Source: Haliotis rufescens (Eukaryota). Taken from it: a stretch of 64,000 bases of DNA. The stretch lies in assembly GCF_023055435.1 (NCBI RefSeq), contig NW_025963813.1:38502001-38566000 (forward strand). Reading direction: 5' to 3'. The position numbers were made by a program, and so were the translations under genes. Shown one piece after another: positions 4,693 to 47,360 of this stretch (positions are counted from its first letter, which is position 1; each line of letters begins with the position of its first letter). Below the pieces are notes generated by a model, which ran no database searches, had not been told where the DNA came from, and worked only from the letters and a program-made list of their open reading frames with translations.

Positions 4693-4779
4693 CCTATCGT
4701 ATTTTGTACAATTCCATCGGCTCCTGCCATAACTAACACGTGAAGCCATTATTTCGATCCACTCACTGATGCTCTATCG

Positions 4780-6090
4780 ACTCGTGTGACGTCTGTGTTA
4801 TTTTTGACATTTACATGAACTCCGGTGACATATCCAAACATCATTTCCATTCGCTCTTCCATGCTCATGAACAGGTACGTAACCAGTGCACAACTTTTTG
4901 TCACCCACGCATAATGTTCGAAGAAGCAGTGTGGCCCCATTGTTATTCTGTACATTCACAATAGCTCCATCCCTCAGTAACATATCAACCCACTTTTAAG
5001 AACCACTCTTTAATGCAGAGTGGTGTGTCGCTTGTGTTTGTTGCGTAAGTTAACAACAGCTCTGATATTCAGTAACATAATAAATCTCTTTCGATCGACG
5101 CATTGATGCTCTATGGAGAACTGTGGCTCCCTTGTTATTCTGTATATACACATCAGCTCCAACCGTCAGTAACAGGTCAACACACTCTTTCCATCGTGAC
5201 ATTGATGCGCCATGAAGTGGTGTGTTGCCTGTGTTATTCCGTACATTCACACCAGCTCCAGGCTCCAGTAATATATCAACACACTCTTTCGATCCATGCA
5301 TTGATTCACCATGTAGTGGTGTGTCGTCCGCACTGTCTCTTCATTAACATCAACTCAGAGCTTCAATAACACATCAACAAACAATTACGACCCATGCATT
5401 GATACTCCATGTGGTGGCGTGTCGACCGTACTATTCTCTACGTTTACACCAGCTCCAGCCTTCAGTAACAGATCAACACACTCTTTCGTAGACGCATTGA
5501 TCCTTCATGAAGTGGTGTGTTGTCTGGTGTATTATGTACATTCACTTCAGCTCCAACCTTCAGTAACACATCAATCCGTTCTTTCGATCCACGCATTCAT
5601 CCTCCATAAAGCTATATGTCGCCTGTGTTATTTTCTACATTCACAGCAGCTCAAGCCTTCAGTAACAGATCAACACACACTTTCGTTCATAGAATTGGTA
5701 CGCCATGAAGTGGTGTGTTGCCAGTGTTGTTTTGTAATTGGACATCAGCTCTAGCCTTCAGTAAGAGATCAACACATTCTCTCGATCCAGATCTTGATGT
5801 TTTATGGGGTGGTGTGTCGCCAGTGCTATACTGTACTTTTACATCAGCTCCAGTCTTCAGTAACAGATCAACACACTCTTTCGATCCATGCATTGATGCT
5901 GCATGGAGTGGTGTGTCTCCTGTTTCGTTTTGTACTTTAACATCAGCGCCGGCCTTCAGTAACATATCGACACACTTTTGAGATCCACACCCTGATGCTT
6001 CATGAAGTGGAGTATCGCCTGACTCGTTTTGTACTTTTACATCAGTTCCAGCCTCCAGTAACATATCAACACACTTTTGAGATCCACACC
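4780..6090 (-). pseudogene. Untranslated, frameshifted continuation of the ankyrin array downstream of the copy A stop
   Basis: Ankyrin ORF fragments 5687-6094, 5050-5301 and 4798-4983; a 1-bp deletion relative to the repeat consensus creates TGA at 6091-6093. Confidence 0.85.
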
Positions 6091-6920
6091 TCATGTGTTA
6101 TGAAGTGGTGTGTCACCTGTCCTATTCTGTACCTGTATATCAGCCCCAGCCTTTAGTAACAGTTCAACACACTCTTTCGATCCATAGATTGATGCTTCAT
6201 GAAGTGGCGTGTAACCTGAGTTGTTTTGTACTTTTACATCAGCCCCAGCCTTCAGTAACAGTTCAACACACTTTTGAAATCCACACCTGGATGCGTTATG
6301 AAGTGGAGTGTCGCCTGTCTCGTTTTGTACTTTCACATCAGCCCCAGCCTTCAGTAACAGTTCAACACACTTTTGAGATCCACACCTGGATGCGTTATGA
6401 AGTGGAGTGTCGCCTGTCTCGTTTTGTACTTTCACATCAGCCCCAGCCTTCAGTAACAGTTCAACACACTCTTTCAATCTATACATTGATACTCCATAGG
6501 GTGTCTCGCGTCCTATCTTATCCCCAACATTCACGCCATCCTTCTGTAACAGGTCAAAACGCTCTCTCAATCTACGCCCTGATGCGTTATGAAGTGGAGT
6601 GTCGCCTGTCTCGTTTTGTACTTTCAAATCAGCTCCAGCCTTCAGTAATATATCAACACACTTTTGAGATCCAAACATTGATGCGTAATGAAGTGGTGTG
6701 TCGCCTGATCTATTCTGTACCTGTATGTCAGCCCCAGCCTTCAGTAACAGGTCAACACACTCTTTCGATCCATGGATTGATGCTCCATGAAGTGAAGTGT
6801 GGCCTGAGTTGTTTTGTACTTTTACATCAGCCCCAGCCTTCAGTAACAGTTCAACACACTCTTTCGATCCATGGATTGATGCTTCATGAAGTAGTGTGTT
6901 TCCTTTGTTATCCTCTACAT
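4880..6920 (-). repeat. 99-bp ankyrin-coding tandem array, copy A (~20 units, ~8 translated)
   Basis: Recurrent plus-strand unit ttcagtaacagatcaacacacttttgagatccacac...gaagtggagtgtcgcctgtctcgttttgtacttttacatcagccccagcc at 99-nt period. Confidence 0.93.
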
Positions 6921-9900
6921 TTACTCTCGCTGCAGCTGCCGGGGTGTCTCTTGACTTGATACCTGAATTATTGTCAGCTTTCTGCTTTCTGAAACCTTCA
7001 GCCGATTGACCAACTTCTTTTTCGTCTTCTTCGTGAGACGTATAAAGCTGTTCAAGTAAAAATAGAAGAACCTCTTGGCTTCCTCCCTTGCACGCTGAGT
7101 GCAGTGCAGTATTTCCATTTGGAGCCACCATGCCGACATTTGCTCCTTTTCCCGTCAAAACTCTCACGACATCCAGGTTTCCACTTTCACATGCTTCATG
7201 AAGAGGGAGTTGTCCATGCTTCGATATCATATTGACTGTGGCCCCTTTATCAAACAGCATCTTAACAACATCCAGATTCCCACTTTTACATGCAGCACAT
7301 ACTTCATCGCCACTAAGTTCTGCTCCTGCCACAAGTAAAGTCTTAACAATGTTCGCATGTCCAATTGTACATGCTTCATACAAAGGATTAAAATAGAAAT
7401 CGTGACCAGCAACATTTGCTCCTCCCTCCAGCAAAGCTTTCACAATGCCCTCCGTGCCTGTCCGACATGCCAAAACCAGAGATGCGTACGTACATTCACT
7501 ATCAACATCAACTCTATCCAGCACCAGTTTTACAATTTCTTCCTCTCCACTGAGACAAGCCGCAAATAGAGGAGACATATACTTATACTTATACTTATCC
7601 ACATAACCTACTGCTCCTCTATCCAGTAACAGTTTCACTACGCCCTTGTGACCAGACAGACACGCTTGATAAAGTGAAGTTTTTTTCATCTTATCTGTTA
7701 CATCAATATCTACACCCTTGTCAATCACATACTCCACAGCTGACACAAGACCATGTTTACACAGGTAATGCAGCACAGTTCTGTCATAGCTGTCCGATGC
7801 ATTCAGATCAGGAAGAAGGCGAAGTATCTGGCGTACAAAGTTACAATCTCCAGTCTCCGCTGCTATCATCAGCGGGGTCTGTTCAGGTTCTCCGTAGGTC
7901 GCATTGATGTCCAGTTTTACATGTTGTGTCAGATATGTCAGCACATTTCCTGCAGCATGTTTGCACACACCCAATAAGATCTCATCTATTTCTGACTGAT
8001 GCAGTGTAATGTTTCCCTTCTCCAGTATGTATTTCACCATGGTTGGGGATTTGTTGCTTGGCAGCAACTCCAAACAGGATGCTCGTGTTTTTCTATCAGT
8101 GTTCCTCAGAAATGTATTTACAGATATCTGATATTGTACTTTCAGTATGTTCATCAGTTTATCAATGAAATCAGGATCACAACAGATTTGGTGTGAGATT
8201 ACATATGCCAAGTTGCCCAGCTGAATCTCCATGGCAAATCTCTGCACCAAGTTGTCAATGCAGAAAAGTGGGATTTCTGCAACGAAACCTTGGTTTTCAA
8301 CAGTCCCATGCCTAAGTCGCTGGTTGATGAATGAGAGACTACAATTCTCAATGACAAATACTGGATCTTTTTCAGTCAGAAGAAATGCAACACTGTCATA
8401 GATTGATGGATGGTCAAACATGTATGTTCCATCTTCCAGCTTCAGATATGACCCAACAAGCTTATTGGCAGATGATACACAGTCATGCATCTTGTATTTG
8501 TCTTTATACAATTCAGACTGAGACACTTTACCATCTCCTTGGATCATTGCCTTCAGGAGTTGATGCTTTGATTTATTGTATATTAATTTCTGCAAAGTTT
8601 GGTTTAGAAATTCAAGAGGTCTTGTGAAAAACTCCTTTGCTGATACCTTGGCATTCTGTTTAAAGGCTGTGGCAAAAAGTCTACAGACATGTGGAAACCC
8701 ATGTGGACACGCGATGTAGCTTAATTCAAACATGACCTTTTTCTCAATGTCAACACCTTCCTTTCGAAAAACTGATTTCAAAATATTCAGTTTTTCTTCA
8801 CGATCTATGGTTGGTGAGAGTTCCACTAGATGTTTACTGCTTGTAAGATATTCTCTCGCTCTTCCAAGGTCTGGTAAAGAGGATTTAAGTACATAATCAC
8901 GACCTACAAGAATAAATAAAGATTGTTTCTTTTCATTTTGCTCTGGATTGATGGCAGTTGACTTATTCAAAGCACCATTTAGATCCAAGTCAGGCTTTGG
9001 CAAATCAAGAATCGGACGAAGAGAGGGTCTCCATTTGGTCCACTCTGCAACGTCAAATTCCAGATCACCAAATATATCATCCATCATAATCACTGGGTTG
9101 GTACAAGTCCTGGTGACCTCATTGAACTCGTCTGGGGACACAACTTGGTATACTTGTCTCCCTTGGCTGTGCAGATCTCTGAGGGCCATGTAGGCCACTG
9201 TAGACTTCCCCTCTCCTGGTCTTCCCTTTATTGTCACCCATGTTGCTCCTCTGTCAATCTTCTCCATCACCTCCTTATGTGCCTGTGTCGTAACCATACC
9301 TTGGGTCCATGACTGTATCCTTGATTCTGTTCGTTCTGAAAAAAATATAATAAAATTGATTGAACTGTACAAATCCGATCCTTCTTTCACACATACTGAC
9401 CTAGTGTTATTGTTACAAGCAACCTCTCCTTAATGTATAAATACATTTCACATTTGCTCCACATGATAATAAATTATTAAAACTAAGAACTGATCACTGT
9501 GATATATATCAGTAAATGAGCTGAGAAATTGTGTTAACAAATCTGAGAGTTAATATTTTTGGCTATTGAAAAGTAAATTTGTAAAACAACATCGCAAAGA
9601 ATAAGAACTTTTTCTTAACACAAAACTTGTTAACAAATTAAGCATGCCATTAATGGTCATATTGTTTTACATTGACATCCGTTATCTACTTTTACTATCA
9701 TTTTCATGTTAACTTCTACGTTCGATAATGTAATGGCTCAGAATTGTGGAAATAGTACCTGATGAAGATATGGAACACGTTTCAAGAAAATTAAAAGTAT
9801 CATCTACTATATAGTGCATAGATATTATATTGCAGAAGATGCACGTAGCGTAAGTCTCTTGTCCCTGTTTCTGCATATACCTCTTGCATCAATGTATTGA

Positions 9901-12900: not shown

Positions 12901-13308
12901 CCTGGTCAACCCTTTACTTCTGCCCTCAACCCTCATTCTCTCATTGGTCTCACACTCTGTGCCCTCCATCCTTTTCTTTACCCTGGTCAACCCTTTACTT
13001 CTGCCCTCGACCCCCATTCTCTCATTGGTCTCACCCTCTGTGTCCTCCATCCTTCTTTTCTTTACCCTGGTGAACCCTTTACTTCTGCCCTCAACCCTCA
13101 TTCTCTCATGGGCCTCACCCACTGTGTCCTCCATCCTTCTTTTCTTTACCCTGGTCAACCCTTTACTTCTGCCCTCGACCCTCATTCTCTCATGGGCCTC
13201 ACCCTCTGTGTCCTCCATCCTTCTTTTCTTTACCCTGGTCAACCCTTTACGTCTTGTGTCCACCTTTACTCTCTCTCTTTGTCTCCACTCTCTGTCCCAT
13301 GCACCCAT
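6091..13308 (-). CDS. NLR-like protein copy A: basic 28-aa repeats + RHIM-like motif + nSTAND3-type NTPase + ankyrin repeats. Predicted exons 13308-11709, 11388-11143 (donor defective), 10191-10027, 9335-6091; ~1750 aa
   Basis: Walker A IKGRPGEGKST and Walker B PVIMMDDIFG (nSTAND3-like), followed by many GxTPLH-xA-xxG ankyrin repeats; all three introns are phase 1 with AG acceptors; donors G|GTAAGG (11709) and A|GTGAGT (10027); start codon uncertain. Confidence 0.8.
12200..13290 (-). repeat. 84/81-bp coding repeat (RSKGLTRVKKRRMEDTEGEAHERMRVEG), ~7 near-identical units plus several diverged units; copy A only
   Basis: Visible in ORF 11611-13323 and as repeated plus-strand ccctggtcaaccctttacttctgccctc. 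Confidence 0.9.
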
Positions 13309-13644
13309 CTTTCCCTTACACAAGCCAACACTTTACTTCTCGTCTGCATGTGCACTGTTTTCACGCCATCAATTACTGTGTTATTGATCCTTGCTAACTT
13401 TACTTGGGTGAATCGTTTCTCTATGACTACGACCTGCCCTCTCTGTCGCTCATATTTTCCAGTTGGAATATTTTTATTATTGGGCTTGCTGTTTCCTTCA
13501 GTACCACCACAGGAGAAAAGACATTTATATCAATCTGATGCTACAACTGTTCTCATTCTTGAACGGTGAATTCTCGGAAACCTGCACGAATAAGAAAATA
13601 AAAACACAACTACGTTTGTAAACACACCTCTGCAGATACAGTCT

Positions 13645-32265: not shown

Positions 32266-33208
32266 CCCAGCTGAATGAGGGTTAAAGTGACGTGTCACAA
32301 TAGGGCACCGAGCGGTATACAAAGCCAGCGGACGGCCCAGCTGAATGAGGGTTAAAGTGATGTGTCACAATACGGCACCGAGCGGTATACAAAGCCAGCG
32401 GACGGCCCAGCTGAATGAGGGTGAAAGTGATGTGTCACAATACGGTACCGAGCGGCATACAAAGCCAGCGGACGGCCCAGCTCAATGAGGGTTAAAGTGA
32501 TGTGTCACAATACGGCACTGAGCGGTTTACAAAGCCAGCTGACGGCCCAGCTAAATGAGGGTGAAAGTGATGTGTCACAATAGGGCACCGAGCGGTATAC
32601 AAAGCCAGCGGACGGCCCAGCTAAATGAGGGTGAAAGTGACGTGTCACAATAGGGCACCGAGCGGTAAACAAAGCCAGCGGACGGCCCAGCTCAATGAGG
32701 GTTAAAGTGATGTGTCACAATACGGCACCGAGCGGTATACAAAGCCAGCGGACGGCCCAGCTAAATGAGGGTGAAAGTGATGTGTCACAATACGGCACCG
32801 AGCGGTATACAAAGCCAGCGGACGGCCCAGCTCAATAAGGGTTAAAGTGACGTGTAACAATACGGCACTGAGAGGTATACAAAGCCAGCGGACGGCCCAA
32901 CTCTATGAGGGTGAAAGTGATGTGTCACAACACGGCACAAAGCGGTATACAAAGCCAGCGGACGGCCCAGCTAAATGAGGGTGAAAGTGACGTGTCACAA
33001 TACGGCACCGAGCGGTATACAAAGCCAGCGGACGGCCTAGCTCAATGAGGGTTAAAGTGACTTGTCACAATACGGCACTGAGCGGTATACAAAGCCAGCG
33101 GACGGCCCAGCTAAATGAGGGTGGAAGTGATGTGTCACAATACGGCACCGAGCGGTATACAAAGCCAGCGGACGGCCAAGCTAAATGAGGGTTAAAATGA
33201 TGTGTCAC
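32266..33208. repeat. 70-bp minisatellite, ~13.5 units (copy B)
   Basis: Period 70 (cccag ending at 32270, 32340, 32410...). Confidence 0.95.
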
Positions 33209-33299: not shown

Positions 33300-36200
33300 T
33301 GTGACGTCTGTGTTATTATTTCCATTTATATGAACTCCGGTAACATATCAAAACATCATTTCCATTCGCTTTTCGATGCTCATGAAGAGGTACGTAACCA
33401 GTGCACAACCTTTTGACACCCACGCATAATGTTCCAAGAAGCAGTGTGGCCCCATTGTTATTCTGTACATTCACAATAGCTCCAGCCCTCAGTAACATAT
33501 CAACACACTTTTGAGAACCACTCTTTAATGCAGAGTGGTGTGTCGCTTGTGTTGCGTAAGTTAACAACAGCTCTGATATTCAATAACATAATAAATCTCT
33601 TTCGATCTACGCATTACTGCTCCATGGAGAAGTGTGGCTCCCTTGTCATTCTGTACATACACATCAGCTCCAACCGTCAGTAACAGGTCAACACACTCTT
33701 TCCATCGTGACATTGATGCGCCATGAAGTGGTGTGTTGCCTGTGTTATTCCGTACATTCACACCAGCTCCAGGATCCAGTAATATATGAACACACTCTTT
33801 CGATCCATGCATTGATTCACCATGTACTGGTGTGTCGCCCGCACTGTCTCTTCGTGTACATGAGCTTAAAGCTTCAATAACACATCAACAAACAATTACC
33901 ACCCATGCATTGATATTCCATGTAGTGATGTGTCTTCCGTACTATTCTCTACATTTACATAAGTTCCAGCCATCAGTAAAACATCAACATACTATTTCGA
34001 CCCATGCATTATAACTCCATGTAGTGGTGTGTCGTCCGTACTGTCTTTATGTTTACATCAGCTCCAACCTTCAATTATAACAGATTAACACACTCTTTCG
34101 TAGACGCATTGATCCTCCATAAGTGGTGTGTCGCCTGTGTTATTCTCTACATTCACTGCAGCACCAGCCTTCAGTAACAGTTCAACACACTCTTTCGATC
34201 CATGGATTGATGCTGCATGAAGTGGTGTGTCGCCTGAGTTGTTTTGTACTTTTATATCAGCGCCAGCCTTCAGTAACATATCAACACACTTTTGAGATCC
34301 ACGCCTTGATGCTCTATGAAGTGAAGTGTCGCCTGTTTTATTCTCAACATTCACATCAGCTGCAACCTTCAGTAAAATATCAACCCACGTTTGAGATCTA
34401 CACCCTGATGCCTGTCTCGTTTTGTGCTATGAGTTATGAAGTGGTGTGTCGCCCGATCTATTCGGTACCTGTATATCAGCCCAAGCCTTCAGTAACAGGT
34501 CAACACAGTCTTTCGATCCATGGATTGATGCTGCATGGAGTGCCGTGTAGCCTGAACAACACACTTTTGAGATCCACACCTGGATGCTTCATGAAGTGGA
34601 GTGTCGCCTGTCTCGTTTCGTACTTTAACATCAGCTCCAGCCTTCAGTAACATATCAACACACTTTTGAGATCCAAACATTGATGCGATATGAAGTGGTG
34701 TGTCGCCTGCTCTATTCTGTACCTGTATGTCAGCCACAGCCTCCAGCAACAGGTTAACACAGTCTTTAGATCCATACATTGATGCTGCATTGAGTGCTGT
34801 GTAGCCTGAGTTGTTTTGTACTTTTACATCAGCCCCAGCCTTCAGTAACAGGTAAACACACTTTTTCGATCCATGGATTGATGCTGCATGGAGTGCTGTG
34901 TAGCCTGAGTTGTTTTGTACTTTTACATCAGCCCCAGCCTTCAGTAACAGATCAACACACTTTTGAAATCCACACCTGGATGCTTCATGAAGTGGAGTGT
35001 CGCCTGTCTCGTTTTGTACTTTTACATCAGCCCCAGCCTTCAGTAACAGATCAACACATTGTCAGATCCACATCTCGATGCTTCATGAAGTGGAGTGTCG
35101 CCTGTCTCGTTTTGTACTTGTACATCAGCCCCAGCCTTCAGTAACAGATCAACACACTTTTGAGATCAACACCTGGATGCTTCAGGAAGTGGAGTGTCGC
35201 CCGTCTCCTTTTGTACTTTTACATCAGCTCCAGCCTTCAGTAACAGATCAACAAACTTTTGAGATCGATACCTCAATACTTTATGAAGTGGTGTGTCGCC
35301 TGTTCTATTCTGTACCTGTATATCAGCCCCTGCCTTCAGTAACAGGTCAACACACTCTTTCGATCCATACATTAATGTTCTACAGAGTGGCGCGAGTCCT
35401 ATCTGATCCCCGACATTCAGGCCAGCCTTCTGTAACAGGTAAATACGCTCTTCCAATCCGAGCCCTAATACGTTATGAAGTGGAGTGTCGCCTGCCTCGT
35501 TTTGTACTTTAACATCAGCTCCAGCCTTCAGTAACATATCAACACACTTTTCAGATCTGCACATTGATGCGTTATGAAGTGGTGTTTCGCCTGTCTTGTT
35601 TTGTACTTTTACATCAGCTCCAGCCTTCAGTAACAGGTCAACACACTTATGAGATCCACATCTGGATGCTTCATGAAGTGGAGAGTAGCCTGTCTTGTTT
35701 TGTACTTTTACATCAGCCCCAGCCTTCAGTAACATATCAACACATTTTTGAGATCCACATCTGGATGCATCATGAAGTGGAGTGTCGCCTCTCTCGTTTT
35801 GTACTTTCACATCAGCCCCAGCCTCCAGTAACAGATCAACACACTTTTGAGATCCGCACATTGATGCTGCATGGAGTGCTGTGTAGCCTGATTTGTTTTG
35901 TACTTTTACATCAGCCCCAGCCTTTAGTAACAGATCAACACACTTTTGAGATCCGCACATTGATGCTGCATGGAGTGCTGTGTAGCCTGATTTGTTTTGT
36001 ACTTTTACATCAGCCCCAGCCTTCAGTAACAGATCGACACACTTTTGAGATCCACACCTGGATGCTTCATGAAGTGGAGTGTAGCTTGTCTCGTTTTGTA
36101 CTTTTACATCAGCCCCAGCATTCAGTAACAGGTCAACACACTTTTCAGATCCACACCTGGATGCTTTATGAAGTGGAGTGTCGCCTGTCTCGTTTTGTAC

Positions 36201-36422
36201 TTTTACATCAGCCCCAGCCTTCAGTAACAGATCAACACACCTTTCAGATCCACACCTGGATGCTTCATGAAGTGAAGTGTCGCCTGTCTCGTTTTGTACT
36301 TTTACATCAGCCCCAACCTTCAGTAACAGGTCAACACACTTTTGAGATCCAAATATTGATGCTGCATGGAGTGCTGTGCAGCCTGATTTGGTTTGTACTT
36401 TTACATCAGCCCCAGCCTCCAG
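33300..36422 (-). pseudogene. Untranslated continuation of the ankyrin array downstream of the copy B stop (about 30 further repeats)
   Basis: TTA>TAA at 36423-36425; the same frame appears to stay open to GGA>TGA at 35166-35168; then frameshifted fragments 34489-34779, 34085-34354, 33561-33812, 33316-33567. Confidence 0.88.
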
Positions 36423-38080
36423 TTACAGATCAACACACTTTTCAGATCCACACCTGGATGCTTCATGAAGTGGAGTGTCGCTTGTCTCGTTTTGTACTTT
36501 TACATCAGCCCCAGCCTTCAGTAACAGGTCAACACACTTTTCAGATCCGCACATTGATGTTGCATGGAGTGCTGAGCAGCCTGATTTGTTTTGTACTTTT
36601 ACATCAGCCCAAGCCTTCAGTATCAGATCAACACACTTTTCAGATCCACACCTGGATGCTTCAAGAAGTGGAGTGTCGCCTGTCTCGTTTTGTACTTTTA
36701 CATCAGCCCCAGCCTTCAGTAACAGATCAACACACTTTTCAGATCCACACCTGGATGCTTCATGAAGTGGAGTGTCGCCTGTCTCGTTTTGTACTTTTAC
36801 ATCAGCTCCAGCCTGCAGTAACAGATCAACACACCTTTGACATCCATACCTCAATACTTTATGAAGTGGTGTGTCGCCTGTTCTATTCTGTACCTGTATA
36901 TCAGCCCCAGCCTTCAGTAACAGGTCAACACACTCTTTCGATCCATACATTGATACTCTATGGAGTGTCACGAGTCCTCTCTGATCCCCGACATTCAAGC
37001 CAGCCTTCCGAAACAGGTAAAAACGCTCTTCAGATCCGAGCCCTGATACGTTATGAAGTGGAGTATCGCCTGTCTCGTTTTGTACTTTAACATCAGCTCC
37101 AGCCTTCAGTAACATATCAACACAATTTTGAGATCTGCACATTGATGCGACATGAAGTGGTGTGTCGCCTGTTCTATTCTGTACCTGTATATCAGCCCCA
37201 GCCTTCAGTAACAGGTCAACACAGTCTTTAGATCCATACATTGATGCTGCATGGAGTGCTGTGTAGCCTGAGTTGTTTTGTACTCTAACATCAGCCCCAG
37301 CCTTCAGTAACAGGTAAACACTCTTTTGAGATCCGCACATTGATGCTGCATGGAGTGCTGTGCAGCCTGAGTCGTTTTGTACTTTTACATCAGCCCCAGC
37401 CTTCAGTAACAGATCAACACACTTTTGAGATCCAAACATTGATGCGTTATGAAGTGGTGTGTCGCCTGTCTCGTTTTGTACTTTTACATCAGCTCCAGCC
37501 TTCAGTAACAGGTCAACACACTTTTCAGATCCATACCTGGATGCGTTATGAAGTGGTGTGTCGCCTGTCTCGTTTTTTACTTTTACATCAGCTCCAGCCT
37601 TCAGTAACAGGTCAACACACTTCTGAGATCCATACCTCAATGCGGTATGAAGTGGAGTGTCGCCTGTCTCGTTTTGTACTTTTACATCAGCTCCAGCCTT
37701 CAATAACATATCAACACACTTTTGAGATCCAAACATTGATGCGATATGAAGTGGTGTGAAGCCTCGTCTATTCTGTGCCTGTACATCAGCCCCAGCCTTC
37801 AGTAACAGGTCAACACACTCGTTCGATGCATGGATTGATGCTCTATGGAGTGCTGTGTAGCTTGAGTTGTTTTGTACTTTTACATCAGCCCCAGCCTTCA
37901 GTAACAGATCAACACACTTTTCAGATCCACACCTTGATGCATCATGAAGTGGAGTGTCGGCTGTCTCGTTTTGTACTTTCACATCAGCTCCAGCCTTCAG
38001 TAACATATCAACACACTCTTTCGATCCATGGATTGATGCTACATGGAGTGCTGTGTTTCCTGTGTTATCCTCTATATTTA
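33450..38080 (-). repeat. 99-bp ankyrin-coding tandem array, copy B (~46-47 units, ~16 translated)
   Basis: Same 99-nt unit; 16 full repeats plus one partial counted in the 1370-aa ORF. Confidence 0.93.
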
Positions 38081-41000
38081 CTCTAGCTGCAGCTGCCGGG
38101 TTGTCTCTTGACTTGATATTTGAATTATTGTCAGCTTTCTGCTTTCTGAAACCTTCAGCCGATTCACCAACTTCTCTTTCGTCTTCTTCGTGAGACGTAT
38201 AAAGCTTTTCAAGTAAAAATAGAACAACCTCTTGGCTTCCTCCCTTACACGCTGAGTGCAGTGTAGTATTTCCATTTGGAGCCACCATGCTGACATTTGC
38301 TCCTTTCCCCGTCACAACTCTCACGACATCCATCTTTCCACTTTCGCATGCTGCATGAAGAGGGAGTTGTCCATCCTTCGATATCATATTGACTGAGGCT
38401 CCTTTATCAAACAGCATCTCAACAACATCCAGATTCCCACTTTTACATGCAGCACACACTTCATCGCCACTAAGTTCTGCTCCTGCCACAAGTAAAGTCT
38501 TAACAATGTTTGCATGTCCATGTGTACATGCTTGATACAGAGGCTTAAAATGGATATCCCGACCAGCAATATTTGCTCCTCCCTCCAACAAAGCTTTTAC
38601 TATTCCCTCAATGCCGCAAGCACATGCCCAACCCAGAGACCTATCCTTCAATTCACAATTAACATCAGTTCTATCCAGCACCAGTTTTACAACTTCTTCC
38701 TTGCCATTGAGACAAGCCGCAAGTAGAGGAGACTTATGATAGTTATCCACATAACCTACTGCTCCTCTATCGAGTAACAGTTTCACTAGGCCCTTGTGAC
38801 CAGACAAACACGCTAGAAAAAGTGAAGATTGACCCATCTGATCTGGTACATCAATATCTACACCCTTGTCAATGACATACTCCACAGCTGACACAAGACC
38901 ATGTTCACACAGGTAATGCAGCACAGTTCTGTCATAGCTGTCAGATGCATTCAGATCAGGAAGAAGGCGAAGTATCTGGTGTACAAAGTTACAATCTCCA
39001 GTCTCAGTTGCTATCATCAGCGGGGTCTGCTCACGGTGTCTGTATGTAGCATTGATGTCCAGTTTTAAATGTTTTGTCAGATATGTCAGCACATCACCTG
39101 CAGCATGTTTGTACACACCAAATAAGATCTCATCTATCTCCGTCTGATGCAGTGTAATGTTTCCCTTCTCCAGTATGTATTTCACCATGGTTGAACATTT
39201 GTTGCTTGGCAGCAACTCCAAACAGGATTCTAGTGTTTCTTCATCAGTCTTCCTCAGAAATGTATTTACAGATATTTGATATTGTTCTTTCAGTATGTTC
39301 ATCAGTTTATCAATGAAGTCTGGATCACAACAGATTTGATGTGAGATTACATATGCCAGGTTGCCCCGCTGAATCGCCAAGGCAAATCTCTGCACCAAGT
39401 TGTCAATGCAGAAAGGTGGGATTTCTGCAACCAAACCTTGGGTTTCAACAGTCCCATGTCTAAGTCGCTGGTTGATGAATGAGAGACTAGAATTCTCAAT
39501 GACAAATACTGGATCTTTTTCAGTCAGAAGAAATGCAACACTGTCATAGATTGATGGATGGTCAAACATGTATGTACCATCTTCCAGCTTCAGATATGAC
39601 CCAACAAGCTCATTGGCAGATGATACACAGTCATGCATCTTGTATTTGTCTTTATACAATTCAGACTGAGACACTTTCCCATCTCCTTGGATCATTGCCT
39701 TCAGGAGTTGACACTTTGATTTATTGTTTATTAATTTCTGCAACGTTTGGTTTAGAAATTCAAGAGGACTCACGAAAAACTCCTTTGCTGATACCTTGTC
39801 ATTCTGTTTAAAGGCTGTGGCAAATAGCCTACAGACATGTGGAAACCCATGTGGACACGCGATGTGACTTAATTTAAAAATGACTTTTTTCTCAATGTCA
39901 ACACCTTCCATTTGAAAAATTGATTTCAAAATATTCAGTTTTTCTATATGATCTGTGGTTGGTGAGAGTTCGACTAGATGTTTACTGCTTGTAACATATT
40001 CCCTCGCTCTTCCAAGGTCTGGTAAAGAGGATTTTAGTACATAATCACGTCCCACAAGAATAAATAAAGATTGTTTCTTTCGATTTTGCTCTGGATTGAT
40101 GTCAGTTGAACCATTTAAAGTTAGCTCCAAGTCAGGATTTTGCAAATCAAGAATGGGACGAAGAGAGGGTCTCCACTTGGTCCACTCTGCAACGTCAAAT
40201 TCCAGATCACCAAATATATCATCCATCATAATCACTGGGTTGGTACAAGTCCTGGTTACCTCATTGAACTCTTCTGGAGACACAACTTGGTATACTTGTC
40301 TCCCTTGGCTGTGCAGATCTCTGAGGGCCATGTAGGCCACTGTAGACTTCCCCTCTCCTGGTCTTCCCTTTATTGTCACCCATGTTGCTCCTCTGTCAAT
40401 CTTCTCCATCACCTCCTTATGTGCCTGTGTCTTAACCATACCTTGGGTCCATGACTGTATCCTTGATTCTGTTCGTTCTGAAAAAATATAATACAATCGA
40501 TTGAACTGTACAAATCCGATCCACCTTTCACACATACTGACCTAGTGGTATTTTTACAAACAACCTCTCCTTATTGTGTAAATACATTTCACATTTGCTC
40601 CACTTGATAATAAATTATTAATACTAAGAACTGATCACTGTGATATATATCAGTAAATGAGCTGAGAAACTGTGTTAACAAATCTGAGAGTTATTATTTT
40701 TTGCTACTCAAAAGTAAATTTGTAAAACAACAAAAAAGAAAGAAACAAGAACATTTTCTTCAGACAAAACTTGTTAACAAATTAAGCATGCCATTAATGG
40801 TCATATTGTTTTACATTGACATCCGTTATCTACTTTTCCTATCATTTTCATGTTAACTTCTACGTTCGAGAAATTAATGGCTCAGTGAGTTAGTGAGTTG
40901 GGTTCAACGCCACTTTTAACAGTATTCCAGTTACATCACGGCGTGTCAGCTTAATGTGGTTAGGAAAGCTCGAAGTGATGCAGGTCTCAGACGTTTAGCA

Positions 41001-43601
41001 CATCGGTGAAACCCACGAGCACGGGTATGGTGCTGACAAACCTAGAAACATAATCGGGACGAACCGGGATTCGAACCCACAATCAAAGGTTTCTGGCGTG
41101 CCTAAGGGACGTAACTCTGCACAGAAAATCGCGGCGCCTCAGACGACTGTAATGGCTCAGAATTGTCGAAATAGTACGTGATGAAGAAATGGAACACGTT
41201 TCAAGAAAATTAAAAATAACATTTACTATATAGTGCACATATATTATAGTGCAGAAGATACACGTAGCGTAAGTCTCTTGTCCCTGTTTCTGCATATACC
41301 TCTTGCATCTCTGTATTGACCCTTTCATCATGCTCACGGTCTAATATTTGACGACTATTTTATCCAAAAAAATATAACTCTAAATTACTACAATGATGCT
41401 TGTACATGAAGAATCATCTATCTTGCTTTATCCACTGGAACTCACTCCTGATCTTCTGTACTGTAGTCAGCGGTTTCTCCTCCTCCTCCTCCTCCTGGGG
41501 ACAGGGCTGCGATTTACCGATGTTTTGAGTCCCTCCGATGGTCAGATTCCTGCCGCCCTTCACCGTCATTTCTCCAATGTGCTGTTGGACTTGGAGAACG
41601 TTATACTGAATTGCTGTAAAGTACATAATTATTTAGTAACCTGACACTTGTGAAACGGCAATTTCAAGGAACAAGGCCACAACCATTCAGATATCAGAAG
41701 TTCTAATTATATAACTTGAGTGTTTAAAACAATTTAATTGCCAACATGTTATATTACTCATATATGGAGGGAGAAACGAAACACAAATGAAGCCTTATTG
41801 TAATTAATTATTTATCAGGTTTATGATTATAATGTAAAACGTATTCATTGATGAAAACGAATTATGAACAAGCGTCTGAATGTGTTCATGTATGATGACA
41901 AGTTGACGGCTTGCCATATGTTGATCTGTCAAATTGTGGTATGTAAATAGCTCAACTTACTTTGTTTACAACATAGACAAAATTACGTACTTAGCATATC
42001 AGTTACTTGATTGTTGTACAAGCATGTTACAATTTACCTTCAATATTACGGTTGTTACGGGAAAATGTTTTTTCTATCATTTGAAAATACTGCCTCCGTG
42101 GTTGTTCGATCCCGGCGCCAACGTAAGAATATGTTACTTGTTGTTTCCCTGCCTGGTGCGTTATCATTAAGACATAAAACATCGATTTTGTGAGTATCTG
42201 AGTGGGTTATCCATGTTAAACTGCTGGGTGATATCTCAATGGGTTCGCAATATAAATCCGGCATCAGCCGGACTAGTACAAACAGCCTCAAACATGCATC
42301 AAAGTCCCTATATATATATGCAATTACTTTGAACGCAACATCATACCCCATTCATTTCATGATGATGTTAGGCCATGTAATATTCAGGAGTAGGATATGT
42401 GTGTTGGGGCGTGGGGGTACATATTTCTGTTAACTGAACGATATATACTTTTTTAAAAGTAAATCCTTAGGTCAAATAATTTTGCAGCATTTTCGGGAAA
42501 AGATTATATTTTTTCGAGAATATGAATTACCCTAAAATATACACAAGGGGCATTGAATGCTAGATGAATAAATGTTTTCCTCATTTTATGTTAACCTAAA
42601 TGTTCTTGATTACATACGCTCAGAGGTTTTGTTTGCGTCTTTAAGTGAAGATACTTTATCTTCATCAATGTCAGCATCTAGTGTGACTAAGTCAAGAAGG
42701 CAAATCTTCTTACTTGAAGCAGCACCAGATGATGGTGCTGTCTCAGGCACCCAGTTTGTGTCCATCTCCTGTGTATTTGATTGTGAAGGCATCAATGCCA
42801 TGCTGGAATCCTGGCAGGTAGATGAGCCTTGTGTGGCAATATGATGCGTCAGCGTTTTTAATGCTGTGGGAAAACAAGGCATACTTATTGTGAAGTATTC
42901 TTAAAAGAGAACCGCCTCCGTGGTCTAGTGGTAGAGCGCCCGCCCGGAGAGCGGAAGGTCCGGGGTTCGATGCCCGGCGGTATTCATGTTAAATTGCGGC
43001 AGTGAGCATCAGTCTAGACTAGTACAAGCAGCCACACAAACACACACACGTACATGCACGTCGCTGTATAAGTGCAATAATCTTGGACCCGACATTAAAC
43101 CCCATTTCACCTCACCTCGCCTGTTAGAAGTGAGCATTCGTTGAAAGCTTCGAAACTGTCATGAGGATCTGATTTGATGAACTGTCTTGGCGCCCACATG
43201 GTTAATAAGAACAATGTTTAGAGGGGTATTATTAAACGTGACACGTCAGTCAAGACAATAATACTTGACTTTGGACTGAATACCACAAAGCATTCTATGT
43301 AGCTACATGCCAAGTACATAAGAAGAAAACCGCTTTACAAAAGTGCCGGAATCTTCTGGAAAATATATCTACATCACGGTTCCCATTCCTTACCATCATG
43401 GATACTGTGAGAGTTCTGACGCTGGCCAGTCTCAAGCACGACTTTTGAAAAAGTTGCTGCCCCCAATGTAACATTTCCGCCTTCCTCATCATTTTCATCT
43501 GTTTCTCCTTCTTCTTCCTCCAGATTGTCCGCTATTTGAACGTCTTCTGTCACAACACCATCAACATCGTGTTGTTTTCCCTTGACTACTGTGTTATTCA
43601 T
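36423..43601 (-). CDS. NLR-like protein copy B: acidic N-terminus + RHIM-like motif + nSTAND3-type NTPase + ankyrin repeats. Predicted exons 43601-43394, 42863-42618, 41613-41446, 40477-36423; ~1558 aa
   Basis: Same motifs as copy A; all splice sites are canonical GT-AG, phase 1; exon lengths 208+246+168+4055 = 4677 nt, a whole number of codons. Confidence 0.82.
40886..41149 (-). mobile_element. SINE family 2, specific to copy B, in the NLR-like gene intron
   Basis: Perfect TSD taatggctcag at 40875-40885 and 41150-41160; single empty site at 9731-9741 in copy A. Confidence 0.9.
42911..43123 (+). mobile_element. tRNA-derived SINE, family 3 ((CACCT)n tail), specific to copy B
   Basis: A box tggtctagtgg, B box ggttcgatgcc; imperfect TSD ttaaaagaga/ttagaagtga; empty site at ~11426-11436. 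Confidence 0.8.
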
Positions 43602-43969
43602 CCTTACTCACTGCACTTTGTAATCGTTTTCCTTTGACCGGAATATTTCTATTTCTGGTGCTTGTTGTTTCCTTCAGTACCACCAGAGTGAATAAATACA
43701 TTCATATCAAGACCTATCTCATTATTGAACCGTGAATTCTCGGACACCTGCACGAATAATAAAAAAAACACAATTTAGTTTGTAAAGAGACCTCTGCAGA
43801 AACAGTCTGAAGAAGTGTGATGGGTCTTGGTTCCATTCCCCTTTGGTAAAAAAGAATTCAACTGCTGTACACATATCCAAACATATTTAACATTTAAGAC
43901 ATGAATATATACGGTTTTCAAAGTAGCAACATCAACCTTTTTAGTAAATGCAATCAGACCACCAGAGAT

Positions 43970-46900
43970 AGTCCAGGGTGTAGTGGGGGCTGTTTCCAAT
44001 GTGTCGGGGAGAGTGAAGAGGGTGCATTGGAGGTAATGTGTATTGGAGAGAACATCCAGTGTGAAGAGAGCGTCCAAGGTGTAGTGGGGGCTGTTTTCAG
44101 TGTGTATTGGAGAGAGCGTCCAATGTGTAGTTGGGGCTCTTTTCAGTGTTGGGGTGTATTGGAGGCAGTGTTCAGTGTGTATTGGAGAGAACTCCAGTGT
44201 GAAGAGAGCGTCCAAGGTATAGTGGGGGCTGTTTTCAGTGTGTATTGGAGAGAGCGTCCATGGTGTAGTGGAGGCAGTGTTCAGGGTGCATTGGAGAGAA
44301 CTCCAGTGTGAAGAGAGCGTCCAATGTATAGTGGGGGCTGTTTTCAGGGTGTAGGTGAGAGAATGACCAGGGTGTAGTGGAGCCAGTGTTCAGGGTGTAG
44401 GTGAGAGAGTGACCAGGGTGTAGTGGAGGCTGTGTTCAGGGTGTAGGTGAGAGAGTGACCAGGCTGTAGTTGAGGCAGTATTCAGGGTGTAGGTGAGAGA
44501 ATGACCAGGGTGTAGTGGAGGCAGTGTTCAGGGTATAGGTGAGGGAGTGACCAGGGTGTAGTGGAGGCAGTGTTCAGGGTGTAGGTGAGAGAGTGACCAG
44601 GGTGTAGTGGAGGCAGTGTTCAGGGTGTAGGTGAGAGAGTGACCAGGGTGTAGTGGAGGCAGTGTTCGGAATGTAGGTGAGAGAGTGACCAGGGTGTAGT
44701 GAAGGCAGTATTCAGGGTTTAGGTGAGAGAATGACCAGGGTGTAGTGGAGGCAGTGTTCAGGGTGTAGGTGAGAGAGTGACCAGGGTGTAGTGGAGGCAG
44801 TGTTCGGAATGTAGGTGAGAGAGTGACCAGGGTGTAGTGGAGGCAGTGTTCAGGGTGTAGGTGAGAGAATGACCAGGGTGTAGTGGAGGCAGTGTTCAGG
44901 GTGTAGGTGAGAGAGTGACCAGGGTGTAGTGGAGGCAGTTTTAAGGGTGTAGGTGAGAGAATGACCAGGGTGTAGTGGAGGCAGTGTTCGGAATGTAGGT
45001 GAGAGAGTGACCAGGGTGTAGTGGAGGCAGTGTTCAGGGTGTAGGTGAGAGAGTGACCAGGGTGTAGTGGAGGCAGTGTTCGGAATGTAGGTGAGAGAGT
45101 GACCAGGGTGTAGTGGAGGCAGTATTCAGGGTTTAGGTGAGAGAATGACCAGGGTGTAGTGGAGGCAGTGTTCAGGGTGTAGGTGAGAGAGTGACCAGGG
45201 TGTAATGGAGGCAGTGTTCGGAATGTAGGTGAGAGAGTGACCAGGGTGTAGTGGAGGCAGTGTTCAGGGTGTAGGTGAGAGAGTGACCAGGGTGTAGTGG
45301 AGGCAGTGTTCAGGGTGTAGGTGAGAGAGTGACCAGGGTGTAGTGGAGGCAGTGTTCGGAATGTAGGTGAGAGAGTGACCAGGGTGTAGTGGAGGCAGTG
45401 TTCAGGGTGTAGGTGAGAGAATGACCAGGGTGTAGTGGAGGCAGTGTTCGGAATGTAGGTGAGAGAGTGACCAGGGTGTAGTGGAGGCAGTGTTCAGGGT
45501 GTAGGTGAGAGAGTGACCAGGGTGTAGTGGAGGCAGTGTTCAGGGTGTAGGTGAGAGAGTGACCAGGGTGTAGTGGAGGCAGTGTTCAGGGTGTAGGTGA
45601 GAGAGTGACCAGGGTGTAGTGGAGGCAGTGTTCAGGGTGTAGGTGAGAGAGTGACCAGGGTGTAGTGGAGGCAGTGTTCGGAATGTAGGTGAGAGAGTGA
45701 CCAGGGTGTAGTGGAGGCTGTGTTCAGGGTGTAGGTGAGAGAATGACCAGGGTGTAGTGGAGGCAGTGTTCAGGGTGTAGATGAGAGAGTGACCAGGGTG
45801 TAGTGGAGGCAGTGTTCAGGGTGTAGGTGAGAGAGTGACCAGGGTGTAGTTGAGGCAGTGTTCAGGGTGTAGGTGAGAGAGTGACCAGGGTGTAGTGGAG
45901 GCAGTGTTCAGGATGTAGTGGAGGCAGTGTTCAGGGTGTAGTGGAGGCAGTGTTCAGGGTGTAGGTGGGAGAGTGACCAGGGTGTAGTGGAGGCAGTGTT
46001 CAGGGTGTAGTGGAGGCAGTGCCTTTACTCTGGGAACACAACCGTTATACATAAATACCCAGGTTTGAAAAGTGATTGTAATTACACATTTGAACCTGCG
46101 TATCTCATAAGCAATATAATCAACTTAAACCTAGTTTCGGTTTCGCCAGGGCTCCATTTTCGTGTAATAAACATCATTCAGCATGGTATAGCATATTATA
46201 CACAAGCACATCTATACATATACCGCGTTCTCAAATTAATTAGAATTGCTAGCTACTTTAGATTTACATACTGTCAATGAAGTCACTGATACATTGCCTC
46301 GGAACAGGCCAACTGTAGGGGTGTGTGCAAACCCATCTTATCTGTGACTATAAGGGAACAGGGCTCCTCGCAGGGAAGATATGTCTATGCTGTGTATGTG
46401 AGTTTTATAATGCGCTACAATGCAATGTGGATTTCGTGTTGATTCATATAACAACAGCTCGGTAACATATAACTACCGCTTGGAGTAATGATCTGAAAGG
46501 TTACTTGCCTTGACTGCGAAGACAGTCTGTAAGGATTAAATTTCTTCGAATAATTATCATATACACAGGTGGGGATGGGGGATTTGGGGTGGGGGGTGGA
46601 TGCGGGAGGGGGGGGGGGGGGGGGGGAGGGTAGTCCTCCGAGTCATTTTCGGAGGCAGTATTCAGGATGTTGGGGAGTGAAGGGTGTAGTGAAGGTTGTG
46701 TTCAGGGTGTAGACTGGTGCGTCCAGGGTGTAGTGGAGGCAGTGTTCAGGGTGCAGGGAAGAGAGAGTCCAGGGTATAGTGGAGGCAGTACTCAGTGTGC
46801 AGGGTAGAGAGAGTCCAGGGTGTAGTGGAGGCAGTTTTAAGTGTGCAGGGGAGAGAGAGTCTATGGAAAAGTGGCGGCAGTATGCAGGGTGTAAGGGAGA

Positions 46901-47360
46901 GATTAACCAGGGTATAGTCGAGGCAGTATTCAGGGTGTAGAGGAGAGTGCGTTCACGATGTTGTGACGGTTGTTTTCAGGGTGTTGGGGAAAACCTTACT
47001 CCGGTTTATCGGATGCAGTATTCAGAGTGTATAGGAGAAATCGTCCAGGGTGTATTGGCCGCTGTTTTCAGGGTGTAGATGAGAGAGTTCAGGATATAGT
47101 GGAGGCAGTATTCAGTGTGGGTGTAGGGGAGGGAGCGTCCAGGATGTAGTGACGGATGTGTCCAGGGTGTTGGGGAGAGTGCGTCCAGGATGTAGTGACG
47201 GATGTGTTCAGGGTGTTGGGGAGAGTGCGTCCAGGATGTAGTGACGGATGTGTTCAGGGTGTTGGGGAGAGTGCGTCCAGGATGTAGTGACGGATGTGTT
47301 CAGGGTGTTGGGGAGAGATTTACCAGGGTGTTGTGAAGGCAGTGTCGGGGTGTAAGAGGG
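43970..47360. repeat. G-rich 46-bp minisatellite (copy B; highly homogeneous at 44345-46020, interrupted at ~46021-46650)
   Basis: Period 46 (44581, 44627...); variant units with cggaat and gaat. Confidence 0.93.

What the first reader, a model, noticed from the sequence alone, without database searches (positions are those of the whole stretch)
36423..38080. Natural DARPin-like library: near-identical ankyrin repeats that vary at the binding-surface positions
Seen: the framework (KCVDLLLKAGADVKVQN..G.TPLH.AS..GS) is almost invariant even in DNA. Variation concentrates in the hairpin (ET/NS/RT/KS/RR/DS; D/Y/C/F/H/N), the residue after LH (E,N,A,V,D,R,I,T,K; also G,Y in copy A) and the pair after AS (RC, MF, IH, MY, RY, MC; also IY in copy A). 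Established: apart from the post-LH residue, these are the positions randomised in designed ankyrins (DxxGxTPLHLAAxxG), and fungal NLRs carry repeats with high internal conservation that are shuffled by unequal exchange. Inference: a rapidly re-programmable recognition domain. Repeat order and number differ between copy A (~8 translated) and copy B (~16), while the NTPase regions are closely similar.
Basis: partly seen in the sequence, partly recalled or inferred. Interest (0 to 1): 0.85.

Follow-up and report, generated by a model that had tools for sequence, protein, structure and literature searches.

The report
Abalone STAND-NTPase gene with ankyrin array
This is the ankyrin-repeat tail of a red abalone gene that resembles an innate immune receptor: the repeats multiply and shuffle over evolutionary time and differ mostly on their predicted binding face, but this copy is cut short by a stop codon and nothing shows a re-programmable "library".

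Summary
The repeats are real. Window 36423-38069 (minus strand) is the translated part of a 99-nt tandem array of canonical ankyrin repeats. It ends a Haliotis rufescens gene (RefSeq model P0001) that begins with an nSTAND3 P-loop NTPase.

Amino-acid variation does peak at repeat positions 10, 2, 5, 14, 13 and 3, and also at 17, 18 and 7.

Three parts of the reading fail:
- The framework is not invariant in DNA. Units are on average 80% identical, with framework pS about 0.22.
- The variable residues are inherited as linked blocks in 4-5 unit subtypes, not mixed like a library.
- Excess of nonsynonymous change is not significant (omega 1.36, p=0.29). Only codon 10 is suggestive.

A third copy 1.26 Mb away is 99% identical to B in the gene body. 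It has about 61 units against 42 in B and 18 in A, so arrays change by unequal exchange. It carries Leu where B has its TAA stop, and it has a different stop of its own. The units after B's stop are therefore remnants of a longer reading frame.

Recent B-versus-C changes are evenly spread and mostly nonsynonymous.

Verdict: a new animal member of the known class of STAND/NLR-like genes with highly internally conserved repeats (described in fungi, and reported across life in 2026). The scan noted the same kind elsewhere in this genome (s1-818340).

The parts
36426..38069 (-). Translated part of the copy-B ankyrin array. It holds 16.7 units of 33 aa, including one irregular 93-nt unit (37079-36987, GLGSEERF type) followed by a divergent unit.
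   Evidence: TRF period 99; open frame and units; Pfam Ank/Ank_2; PDB ankyrin and DARPin matches; AF2 model gives helix 1 at positions 7-14 and helix 2 at 17-25
36423..36425 (-). TAA stop inside a unit (KCVDL*LEAG). The paralogue C has TTA (Leu) at the same codon.
35169..36422 (-). 418 further codons, about 13 well-preserved units, in the same frame after the TAA. They are the remnant of a longer ancestral reading frame.
   Evidence: co-linear and 99% identical with copy C, where this stretch is not preceded by the TAA
35166..35168 (-). Second in-frame stop (TGA, at a Gly codon, EASRC*SQK), shared by copies B and C.
35014..35111 (-). 98-nt unit with a 1-nt deletion at codon 18 (frameshift), shared with C. 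It is a different lesion from the copy-A frameshift.
33400..35013 (-). Decaying 3' tail of the array. It starts with a few good units, followed by units with stops, indels and about 60-75% identity to the consensus.
39921..40436 (-). nSTAND3 P-loop NTPase domain, with Walker A GRPGEGKST at 40341-40367 and Walker B VIMMDD at 40209-40235.
   Evidence: Pfam PF20720, E 7.3e-17, 61.9 bits against cut-off 27.2; motif coordinates
38165..39047 (-). About 9 divergent (non-homogenised) ankyrin repeats and an acidic linker, lying between the NTPase/helical region and the tandem array.
   Evidence: Ank_KRIT1 and ANK_LRRK2 type matches at aa 538-778
36423..40477 (-). Last, large coding exon of copy B. The splice acceptor (TTTTTTCAG) lies at 40478-40486.
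   Evidence: RefSeq protein P0001; transcript-like contigs of two runs end at 40477 and continue into exon-3-like letters
41447..41617 (-). Upstream coding exon 3 of copy B (Q/G/N-rich motif exon, IQYNVLQVQQHIG...GGTQNIG). Exons 1 and 2 lie at 43392-43601 and 42688-42864.
   Evidence: tblastn of P0001; no Pfam family
4941..6924 (-). Copy-A array (paralogue P0003). 8.3 units are translated, then a 1-nt deletion at codon 12 of the unit at 6029-6126, then a decaying tail.
6091..9390 (-). Copy-A large open frame (nSTAND3 NTPase + ANK). It is 87% identical in protein to B outside the array.

Best explanation
The region is the repeat (presumed ligand-sensing) domain of a STAND, NLR-like gene of red abalone.

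Gene architecture:
- three short 5' exons without a known domain;
- an nSTAND3 P-loop NTPase, the presumed nucleotide-dependent switch and oligomerisation module;
- about 9 divergent ankyrin repeats;
- a tandem array of internally conserved 33-residue ankyrin repeats.

The gene belongs to a large Haliotis-specific expansion.

How the array evolves in the germline:
- Single units and multi-unit blocks are duplicated and deleted by unequal exchange.
- Sequence is exchanged between loci.
- The framework stays under purifying selection. Positions in the hairpin (2, 3, 5) and on one face of helix 1 (10, 13, 14) change freely or under diversifying selection, so most units show a different surface.
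- Arrays are pruned by nonsense and frameshift mutations, and the part left behind the stop decays.

Copy B is currently cut to 16.7 units by a recent TTA-to-TAA change.

Shown here: the anatomy, the site heterogeneity, repeat-number change between near-identical copies, independent truncations, and a spliced mRNA of this gene or of a relative at least 97% identical.

Inferred only: a sensing or immune role, ligand binding on the concave face, and NTPase-driven oligomerisation.
For: Domains and identity:
- Domains. Walker A and B motifs.
- The RefSeq protein is 100% identical, and 47 relatives share the nSTAND3 + ANK architecture in four Haliotis species and in oysters.
- The abalone genome gave 351 first-look nSTAND3 candidates, of which the 21 scored all passed the family cut-off.
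- Arrays of the same 99-nt unit occur at five or more other loci.

Site heterogeneity:
- Pairwise pN/pS is 1.2-1.3 at positions 2, 3, 5, 10, 13 and 14 against 0.38-0.42 for the framework.
- Within-subtype variants are N42:S6 at those positions against N64:S36 elsewhere, Fisher p=0.003.
- Parsimony counts on 60 unique units give omega 1.36 against 0.55, with codon 10 at 18N:0S.
- The same positions vary in 31 other family members.
- 44% of units have their nearest unit in the same protein, against 2.9% expected at random.

Unequal exchange:
- A, B and C have 18, 42 and 61 anchored units.
- C has an extra block of roughly 17-19 units, yet is 99% identical to B over 30 co-linear units.

Exchange between loci:
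- The B and C gene bodies are 97-99% identical, but their flanks only 88-92%.

Constraint on the NTPase:
- B versus C omega is 0.35 outside the array.

Transcription:
- Contigs of two transcript-like runs stop at the acceptor (40477) and continue in exon-3-like sequence.
Against: - No functional data exist, and no ligand is known.
- No Pfam domain was found in the N-terminal exons, so the output arm is unknown.
- All three copies end in independent lesions: TAA in B, TGA in C, and a 1-nt deletion in A.
- B-versus-C array differences are N22.5:S3.5 and evenly spread. This fits relaxed constraint, so B may be on its way to becoming a pseudogene.
- The transcript contigs differ from B by 1.4-2.6%, so B's own expression is not shown.
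- Positive selection is not significant.
- The tree used for the counts ignores recombination.
Confidence: 0.7

Rival explanations
1. Copy B, and likewise A and C, is a dying member of a birth-and-death family. On this reading the pattern at the variable positions is a fossil of past function, and the present locus does nothing.
For: - Each copy has its own premature stop or frameshift inside the array.
- B-versus-C array changes are mostly nonsynonymous (22.5:3.5). They are spread evenly and include G-to-stop, G-to-R and L-to-F in the framework.
- A-versus-B omega is 0.64 outside the array.
- RefSeq had to remove three units to build its model.
Against: - The 802-codon non-array part of the large exon (NTPase, helical region, divergent ANK) is open in A, B and C.
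- B versus C omega there is 0.35.
- 16.7 units lies within the range of annotated family members, which have 4-19 detected units.
- Spliced transcripts at least 97% identical exist.
Confidence: 0.22
2. One reading: a natural combinatorial (DARPin-like) library under strong diversifying selection. The silent units behind the stop would serve as donor cassettes for rapid, possibly somatic, re-programming, as in lamprey VLR genes.
For: - 13 distinct six-residue signatures occur among 15 translated units.
- Five of the six DARPin library positions are among the seven most variable.
- Codon 10 shows 18N:0S.
- Well-preserved units lie behind the stop.
Against: - The variable positions are linked rather than independent.
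- Omega is not above 1.
- The newest changes are not at the variable positions.
- The post-stop units are contiguous and in frame with the gene. They are separated from it by one point mutation that the 99%-identical copy C lacks.
- Contigs from the four runs laid show no rearranged joints in the array, although short contigs make this weak evidence.
Confidence: 0.04
3. The gene is an ordinary ankyrin scaffold, namely the protein phosphatase 6 regulatory ankyrin subunit, as RefSeq names it.
For: The RefSeq product name and the strong ANK similarity to ankyrins.
Against: - The protein has an N-terminal nSTAND3 NTPase. The PP6 subunits ANKRD28/44/52 lack one (my knowledge).
- Dozens of paralogues are about 50% identical, and the family is restricted to this lineage. 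That is unlike a conserved single-copy housekeeping gene.
Confidence: 0.02

Closest known systems
Fungal NLR-like STAND proteins with highly internally conserved (HIC) ANK, TPR or WD repeats, for example Podospora Pa_3_8560 and the HET-E/NWD family (Dyrka et al. 2014, PMC4986451; Ament-Velasquez & Saupe 2026, PMC13449251)
   Same: - A STAND NTPase is followed by a tandem array of similar superstructure-forming repeats.
- Repeat number and order change by unequal exchange, including exchange between paralogues.
- Variation is concentrated in the hairpin and the inner helix of ANK.
- Psim of 0.79-0.81 passes the 2026 HIC threshold of 0.70.
- The 2026 paper already lists nSTAND3 among the ATPases found with HIC repeats and says such proteins occur in animals.
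   Different: - The host is an animal (gastropod), and the NTPase is nSTAND3 rather than NACHT or NB-ARC.
- Internal conservation is lower than the 85% used in 2014.
- The units fall into several old subtypes, so homogenisation is only partial.
- Positive selection is not demonstrated.
- No recognised cell-death N-terminal domain is present.
- Allelic repeat-number polymorphism was not tested.
Designed ankyrin repeat proteins (DARPin libraries)
   Same: - The 33-residue ANK module is the same.
- Positions 2, 3, 5, 13 and 14 vary on a nearly constant framework.
- DARPins are among the PDB matches.
   Different: - Position 33 is constant here.
- Position 10, a framework Leu in DARPins (my knowledge), is the most variable here.
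- Positions 7, 17 and 18 also vary.
- The states are linked in subtypes rather than independently randomised.
Animal NLRs (NACHT-LRR) and the lineage-specific expansions of STAND/death-fold/TRADD-N proteins in marine invertebrates (Kaur et al. 2021, PMC8195603)
   Same: - The tripartite logic is shared: N-terminal part, STAND NTPase, C-terminal repeats.
- Both show large lineage-specific expansion in a slow-moving marine invertebrate.
- Ankyrin arrays are proposed there as direct sensors.
   Different: No NACHT, LRR, death-fold or TRADD-N domain was detected here. That paper does not describe Haliotis nSTAND3-ANK genes.
Canonical ankyrins (ANK1/ANK2, 24 repeats; PDB 4RLV, 7TW3)
   Same: They are the best sequence matches to the repeat units (E 1.5e-148). 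They also form a long solenoid that binds targets on the inner groove.
   Different: Their 24 repeats are old, position-specific and conserved between species. They are not a shuffling tandem array and have no NTPase.

Membership tests
Ankyrin repeat (Pfam PF00023 / PF12796) | 33-residue helix-turn-helix-hairpin repeat matching the Pfam models above their cut-offs | tested here: met
   Ank E 4.5e-156 (498 bits, cut-off 21.1) and Ank_2 E 1.6e-165. The AF2 model shows two helices per unit at positions 7-14 and 17-25.
nSTAND3 STAND NTPase (Pfam PF20720) | Match above the curated cut-off, with Walker A and Walker B motifs | tested here: met
   61.9 bits against cut-off 27.2, aa 34-205. GRPGEGKST and VIMMDD are present.
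HIC-repeat NLR-like proteins (Ament-Velasquez & Saupe 2026 criterion) | STAND ATPase plus a repeat region with Psim >= 0.70 | tested here: met
   Psim is 0.79-0.81 for B and 0.74 for A, computed by hand on anchored units rather than with T-REKS.
HIC-repeat NLR-like proteins (Dyrka et al. 2014 criterion) | At least 85% identity between repeats over at least 100 aa | tested here: not met
   Mean pairwise aa identity is 0.69-0.71 and Psim about 0.80. Only runs of the 'E' subtype reach 92-98% nucleotide identity.
HIC-repeat NLR-like proteins | Repeat-number polymorphism between alleles or strains | not testable with these tools
   Only paralogues could be compared (18, 42 and 61 units in A, B and C). 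Short-read contigs do not resolve the array.
HIC-repeat NLR-like proteins | Positive diversifying selection at sites on the binding surface | tested here: inconclusive
   Omega is 1.36 at six positions (p=0.29). Codon 10 shows 18N:0S, p=0.018 before correction for 33 codons. HyPhy or PARRIS was not available.
NLR in the strict sense (NACHT or NB-ARC + LRR) | NACHT or NB-ARC nucleotide-binding domain, with LRR sensor | tested here: not met
   Pfam finds nSTAND3 (and, weakly, nSTAND5). It finds no NACHT, NB-ARC or LRR.
DARPin-like combinatorial library | Independent variation at positions 2, 3, 5, 13, 14 and 33 on a fixed framework | tested here: not met
   Five of the six positions vary and position 33 does not. 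The positions are strongly correlated, with most pairs at p<0.01. Positions 7, 10, 17 and 18 vary as well.
Somatically assembled repeat receptors (VLR-like) | Incomplete germline gene plus separate donor cassettes copied in somatically | tested here: not met
   The germline gene is a complete open frame. The 'cassettes' are the in-frame continuation of the same array behind a point mutation that copy C lacks. Somatic DNA was not examined.
PP6 regulatory ankyrin repeat subunit (the RefSeq name) | All-ANK protein without an NTPase, conserved as a single-copy orthologue | tested here: not met
   An nSTAND3 NTPase is present. Dozens of lineage-specific paralogues are about 50% identical. The architecture of ANKRD28/44/52 is from my own knowledge.

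The most novel reading that the evidence does not exclude
The Haliotis nSTAND3-ankyrin family may be an animal counterpart of the fungal HIC-NLR system. That would mean several hundred intracellular sensors whose ankyrin arrays are polymorphic in repeat number and order between individuals, are kept diverse by selection at positions 10, 13, 14 and the hairpin, and exchange units between loci more than a megabase apart. Signalling might run through the conserved Q/G/N-rich N-terminal motif exon, for example by prion-like or amyloid templating as in fungal NLRs. Post-stop units could occasionally be recruited back by unequal exchange.
Probability: 0.25. Interest if true: 0.75.

Novelty: new member of a known kind. 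Interest (0 to 1): 0.45.

Why it matters
Rapidly diversifying repeat arrays on STAND NTPases are well studied in fungi, where they underlie non-self recognition. In animals they have so far been reported only as a database-wide statistic.

This locus gives a concrete, dissectable animal example. Three near-identical copies record unit gain and loss, exchange between loci, and independent truncation. The family is large in an aquaculture species that suffers bacterial and viral epizootics.

It also shows that arrays of this kind should not be read as libraries from one sequence alone. Linked subtypes and recent relaxed evolution can mimic the pattern.

Tried and rejected
- Reads. Only assembled contigs were available. 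They fragment inside the array, so I could not test whether the TAA stop or the repeat number is polymorphic, and B's own expression could not be separated from that of close paralogues. No joint supporting RefSeq's three-unit 'intron' was seen, but that is weak evidence.
- Structure. The single-sequence AF2 model was confident only for the first 230 or so residues (mean pLDDT 60). I used it only for helix boundaries.
- Selection tests. HyPhy and PAML were not available. I used pairwise Nei-Gojobori counts and a home-made parsimony (SLAC-like) count on a FastTree tree, ignoring recombination.
- Haplotig hypothesis for copy C. I rejected it because the flanks are only 88-92% identical while the gene body is 97-99% identical.
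- Shared frameshift in A and B. I rejected it because the deletions are at different codons.
- Pfam scan of the N-terminal exons. It gave nothing above threshold; Gp5_C at E 0.08 I treat as chance.
- DARPin literature look-up. The paper read did not print the library positions, so those positions are quoted from my own knowledge. One paper search failed on a formatting limit.

Full report
WHAT IS THERE

The window is red abalone (Haliotis rufescens) DNA, at G000:C35:38502001-38566000. On the minus strand an open frame runs from 40535 to a TAA at 36423-36425 (1370 codons).

RefSeq annotates this gene as P0001 (1429 aa, 100% identical). The model adds three short 5' exons at 43392-43601, 42688-42864 and 41447-41617. 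It ends at the same TAA.

Pfam finds an nSTAND3 STAND NTPase at aa 34-205 (61.9 bits, cut-off 27.2) and ankyrin repeats over the rest. Walker A (GRPGEGKST) and Walker B (VIMMDD) are intact. About nine divergent ANK repeats and an acidic linker follow.

From 38069 downwards comes a tandem array with a 99-nt period. TRF reports 34557-38063, 35.6 copies, 81% matches. The units are canonical ANK repeats: the best PDB matches are Ankyrin-1/2 at E 1.5e-148, and many DARPins also match. A single-sequence AF2 model places helix 1 at unit positions 7-14 and helix 2 at 17-25.

THE OBSERVATION

I cut the arrays into units in the DARPin register, with position 1 at the N of N-E-T-G-D-T-P-L-H. There are 38 clean units: 15 in the B open frame, 15 behind the stop, and 8 in copy A.

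Amino-acid entropy peaks at these positions:
- position 10: 2.9 bits
- position 2: 2.0
- position 5: 1.9
- positions 14 and 17: 1.7 each
- position 13: 1.6
- position 3: 1.5
- then positions 18 and 7

Five of the six positions randomised in DARPin libraries fall in that top seven (hypergeometric p=5e-4). Position 33 is constant. The DARPin positions 2, 3, 5, 13, 14 and 33 are quoted from my own knowledge of Binz et al. 2003.

This overlap is weak evidence. Those library positions were chosen because they are the variable surface positions of natural ANK repeats.

The claim that the framework is almost invariant in DNA does not hold. Units are on average 80% identical (range 57-98%), framework pS is about 0.22, and nucleotide Psim is 0.88.

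SELECTION

- Pairwise pN/pS is 1.2-1.3 at the six positions and 0.38-0.42 in the other 27.
- Distinct variants within unit subtypes are N42:S6 at the six positions against N64:S36 elsewhere (Fisher p=0.003).
- A parsimony count on a tree of 60 unique units from A, B and C gives 62.5 N and 9.5 S at the six positions. That is omega 1.36, not above 1 (p=0.29). The framework gives omega 0.55.
- Only codon 10 stands out (18 N, 0 S, p=0.018), and it does not survive correction for 33 codons.

So site heterogeneity is strong and real. Those positions are at least free to change. Positive selection is suggested but not shown.

NOT A LIBRARY

The units fall into four or five subtypes:
- E: NETGDTPLHEASRCGSEK
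- K: NKSGYTALHAASMCGSQK
- N: NNSGYTALHAASIHGSKE, ending ADIQVQ
- R: NRTGDTPLHxASMFGSQKCVDM
- a conserved irregular pair of the GLGSEERF type

The variable positions are strongly correlated with each other and with positions 7 and 17. Most pairs have permutation p<0.01. Much of the 'variation at binding positions' is therefore old difference between subtypes that were later amplified. The E units are 92-98% identical to each other.

Even so, 13 distinct six-residue signatures occur in the 15 translated clean units.

HOW THE ARRAY CHANGES

The window holds a tandem segmental duplication, so there are two genes. Copy A (P0003; open frame 9390-6091, array 6924-4941) is 87% identical to B in protein outside the array. 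For that comparison pS is 0.10 and omega 0.64.

A search of the abalone genome found a third copy, C, 1.26 Mb away at C35:39793000-39801911. Its relation to B is as follows:
- B and C are 99.2% identical outside the array (pS 0.0165, omega 0.35).
- They are 99.05% identical over 30 co-linear units.
- Their flanks are only 88-92% identical. This points to exchange between loci or a recent copy of about 11.5 kb, not a haplotig.

Anchored unit counts are 18 in A, 42 in B and 61 in C. C carries an extra copy of a block of roughly 17-19 units, with two single-unit losses. Unequal exchange therefore acts on a short time scale.

The pattern holds family-wide in 39 relatives from four Haliotis species:
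- 44% of units have their nearest unit in the same protein, against 2.9% expected.
- The same positions differ between similar units, in the order 10 > 13, 14 > 18, 17, 3, 2.

THE STOP AND THE UNITS BEHIND IT

- At B's TAA, copy C has TTA (Leu).
- C has its own TGA four units earlier (LLLQA*ADV).
- Both share a later TGA (35166-35168) and a 1-nt deletion at codon 18 of the next unit (35014-35111).
- Copy A ends through a different 1-nt deletion, at codon 12.

The 13 good units behind B's stop are thus what is left of a frame of about 29 units. I see no need for a 'silent cassette reservoir' (note s1-816387). Further 3', the units decay progressively down to about 33400.

The newest changes between B and C in the array are 22.5 N to 3.5 S. 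Only 4 of the N changes are at the six variable positions, which is the share expected if changes are evenly spread. They include damaging framework changes. That points to relaxed constraint on the array now, while the NTPase part is still constrained.

EXPRESSION

Only assembled contigs were available. In two transcript-like runs, contigs stop exactly at the acceptor (40477; TTTTTTCAG upstream). They continue with letters that match the end of exon 3 with 2-4 mismatches.

A spliced mRNA of this gene, or of an allele or paralogue at least 97% identical, therefore exists. B itself cannot be singled out, and the array is not resolved.

WHAT IT IS

My best reading (confidence 0.7) is a member of a large abalone expansion of STAND, NLR-like genes: 351 first-look nSTAND3 candidates in the genome, of which the 21 scored all passed the family cut-off. 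The ankyrin array is the presumed sensor. It evolves by unit and block duplication and loss and by exchange between loci. It shows a constrained framework and a free or diversifying concave-face surface, and it undergoes recurrent truncation and decay.

The sensing or immune role, binding on the concave face and NTPase-driven assembly are inferences from what is known of STAND/NLR proteins and ANK domains.

The main rival (0.22) is that B is already a pseudogene.

COMPARISON WITH THE KNOWN

The closest known kind is the fungal NLR-like proteins with highly internally conserved repeats. Dyrka et al. 2014 (PMC4986451) describe ANK arrays with repeat-number polymorphism and positively selected sites in the hairpin and inner helix.

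Ament-Velasquez & Saupe 2026 (PMC13449251) extend the survey across life. They use Psim >= 0.70, include nSTAND3 among the ATPases, and state that such proteins occur in animals.

B has Psim 0.79-0.81, so it passes that threshold, but it does not pass the 85% threshold of 2014. I found no paper describing the Haliotis family.

The RefSeq name, PP6 regulatory ankyrin subunit, reflects ANK similarity only.

This is therefore a new animal member of a known kind. The scan's notes list a similar nSTAND3-ankyrin array elsewhere in this genome (s1-818340).

Noticed in passing
G000:C35:39793000-39801911 (loci L001-L003) versus window 33300-46010: A third gene copy lies 1.26 Mb away. Its gene body is 97-99% identical to copy B, but its flanks are only 88-92% identical. 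This suggests a long (about 11.5 kb) gene conversion between loci or a recent copy. Its array is about 1.9 kb longer through a block duplication.
   Followed up: partly
window 36887-37178 region, against RefSeq protein P0001: The RefSeq model removes three units (the irregular GLGSEERF unit and its two neighbours) as if they were an intron inside the array. No joint supporting this was seen in the contigs laid. It may be a modelling or read-mapping artefact, or it may reflect an allele lacking these units.
   Followed up: partly
window 41447-41617 (-), and 10028-10195 (-) in copy A: A conserved upstream exon encodes a Q/G/N-rich motif (IQYNVLQVQQHIGEMTVKGGRNLTIGGTQNIG). It matches no Pfam family; the only hit is a sub-threshold Gp5_C beta-helix repeat at E 0.08. 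Another first-reader note (s1-816305) calls it RHIM-like. The strict I/V-Q-I/V-G tetrad is not present.
   Followed up: partly
window 32266-33208 and 4311-4693: A 70-nt minisatellite lies directly 3' of each array, with 13.5 copies in B and 5.5 in A at 88-92% matches. The copy number differs between the paralogues.
   Followed up: no
window 44037-47354 and 13645-15196; L002-L003 39805349-39815999: A 23/46-nt satellite (CAGGGTGTAGTGGAG type) lies upstream of each gene copy. Beside copy C it is expanded to more than 10 kb.
   Followed up: no
window 11611-13323 (-): An 84-nt coding tandem repeat gives a Lys/Arg/Glu-rich repeated peptide (RVKKRRMEDTEGE type). RefSeq fuses it to the N-terminus of copy A (P0003). 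Copy B's model has no such part, so the fusion may be an annotation artefact.
   Followed up: no
window 20553-21136 / 52615-53070 and 23412-23838 / 55492-55937: Further minisatellites of 64 nt and 73 nt are duplicated with the segment. The whole unit of roughly 28-32 kb (A 900-26900, B 29000-58400) is 84-95% identical between the two copies.
   Followed up: no
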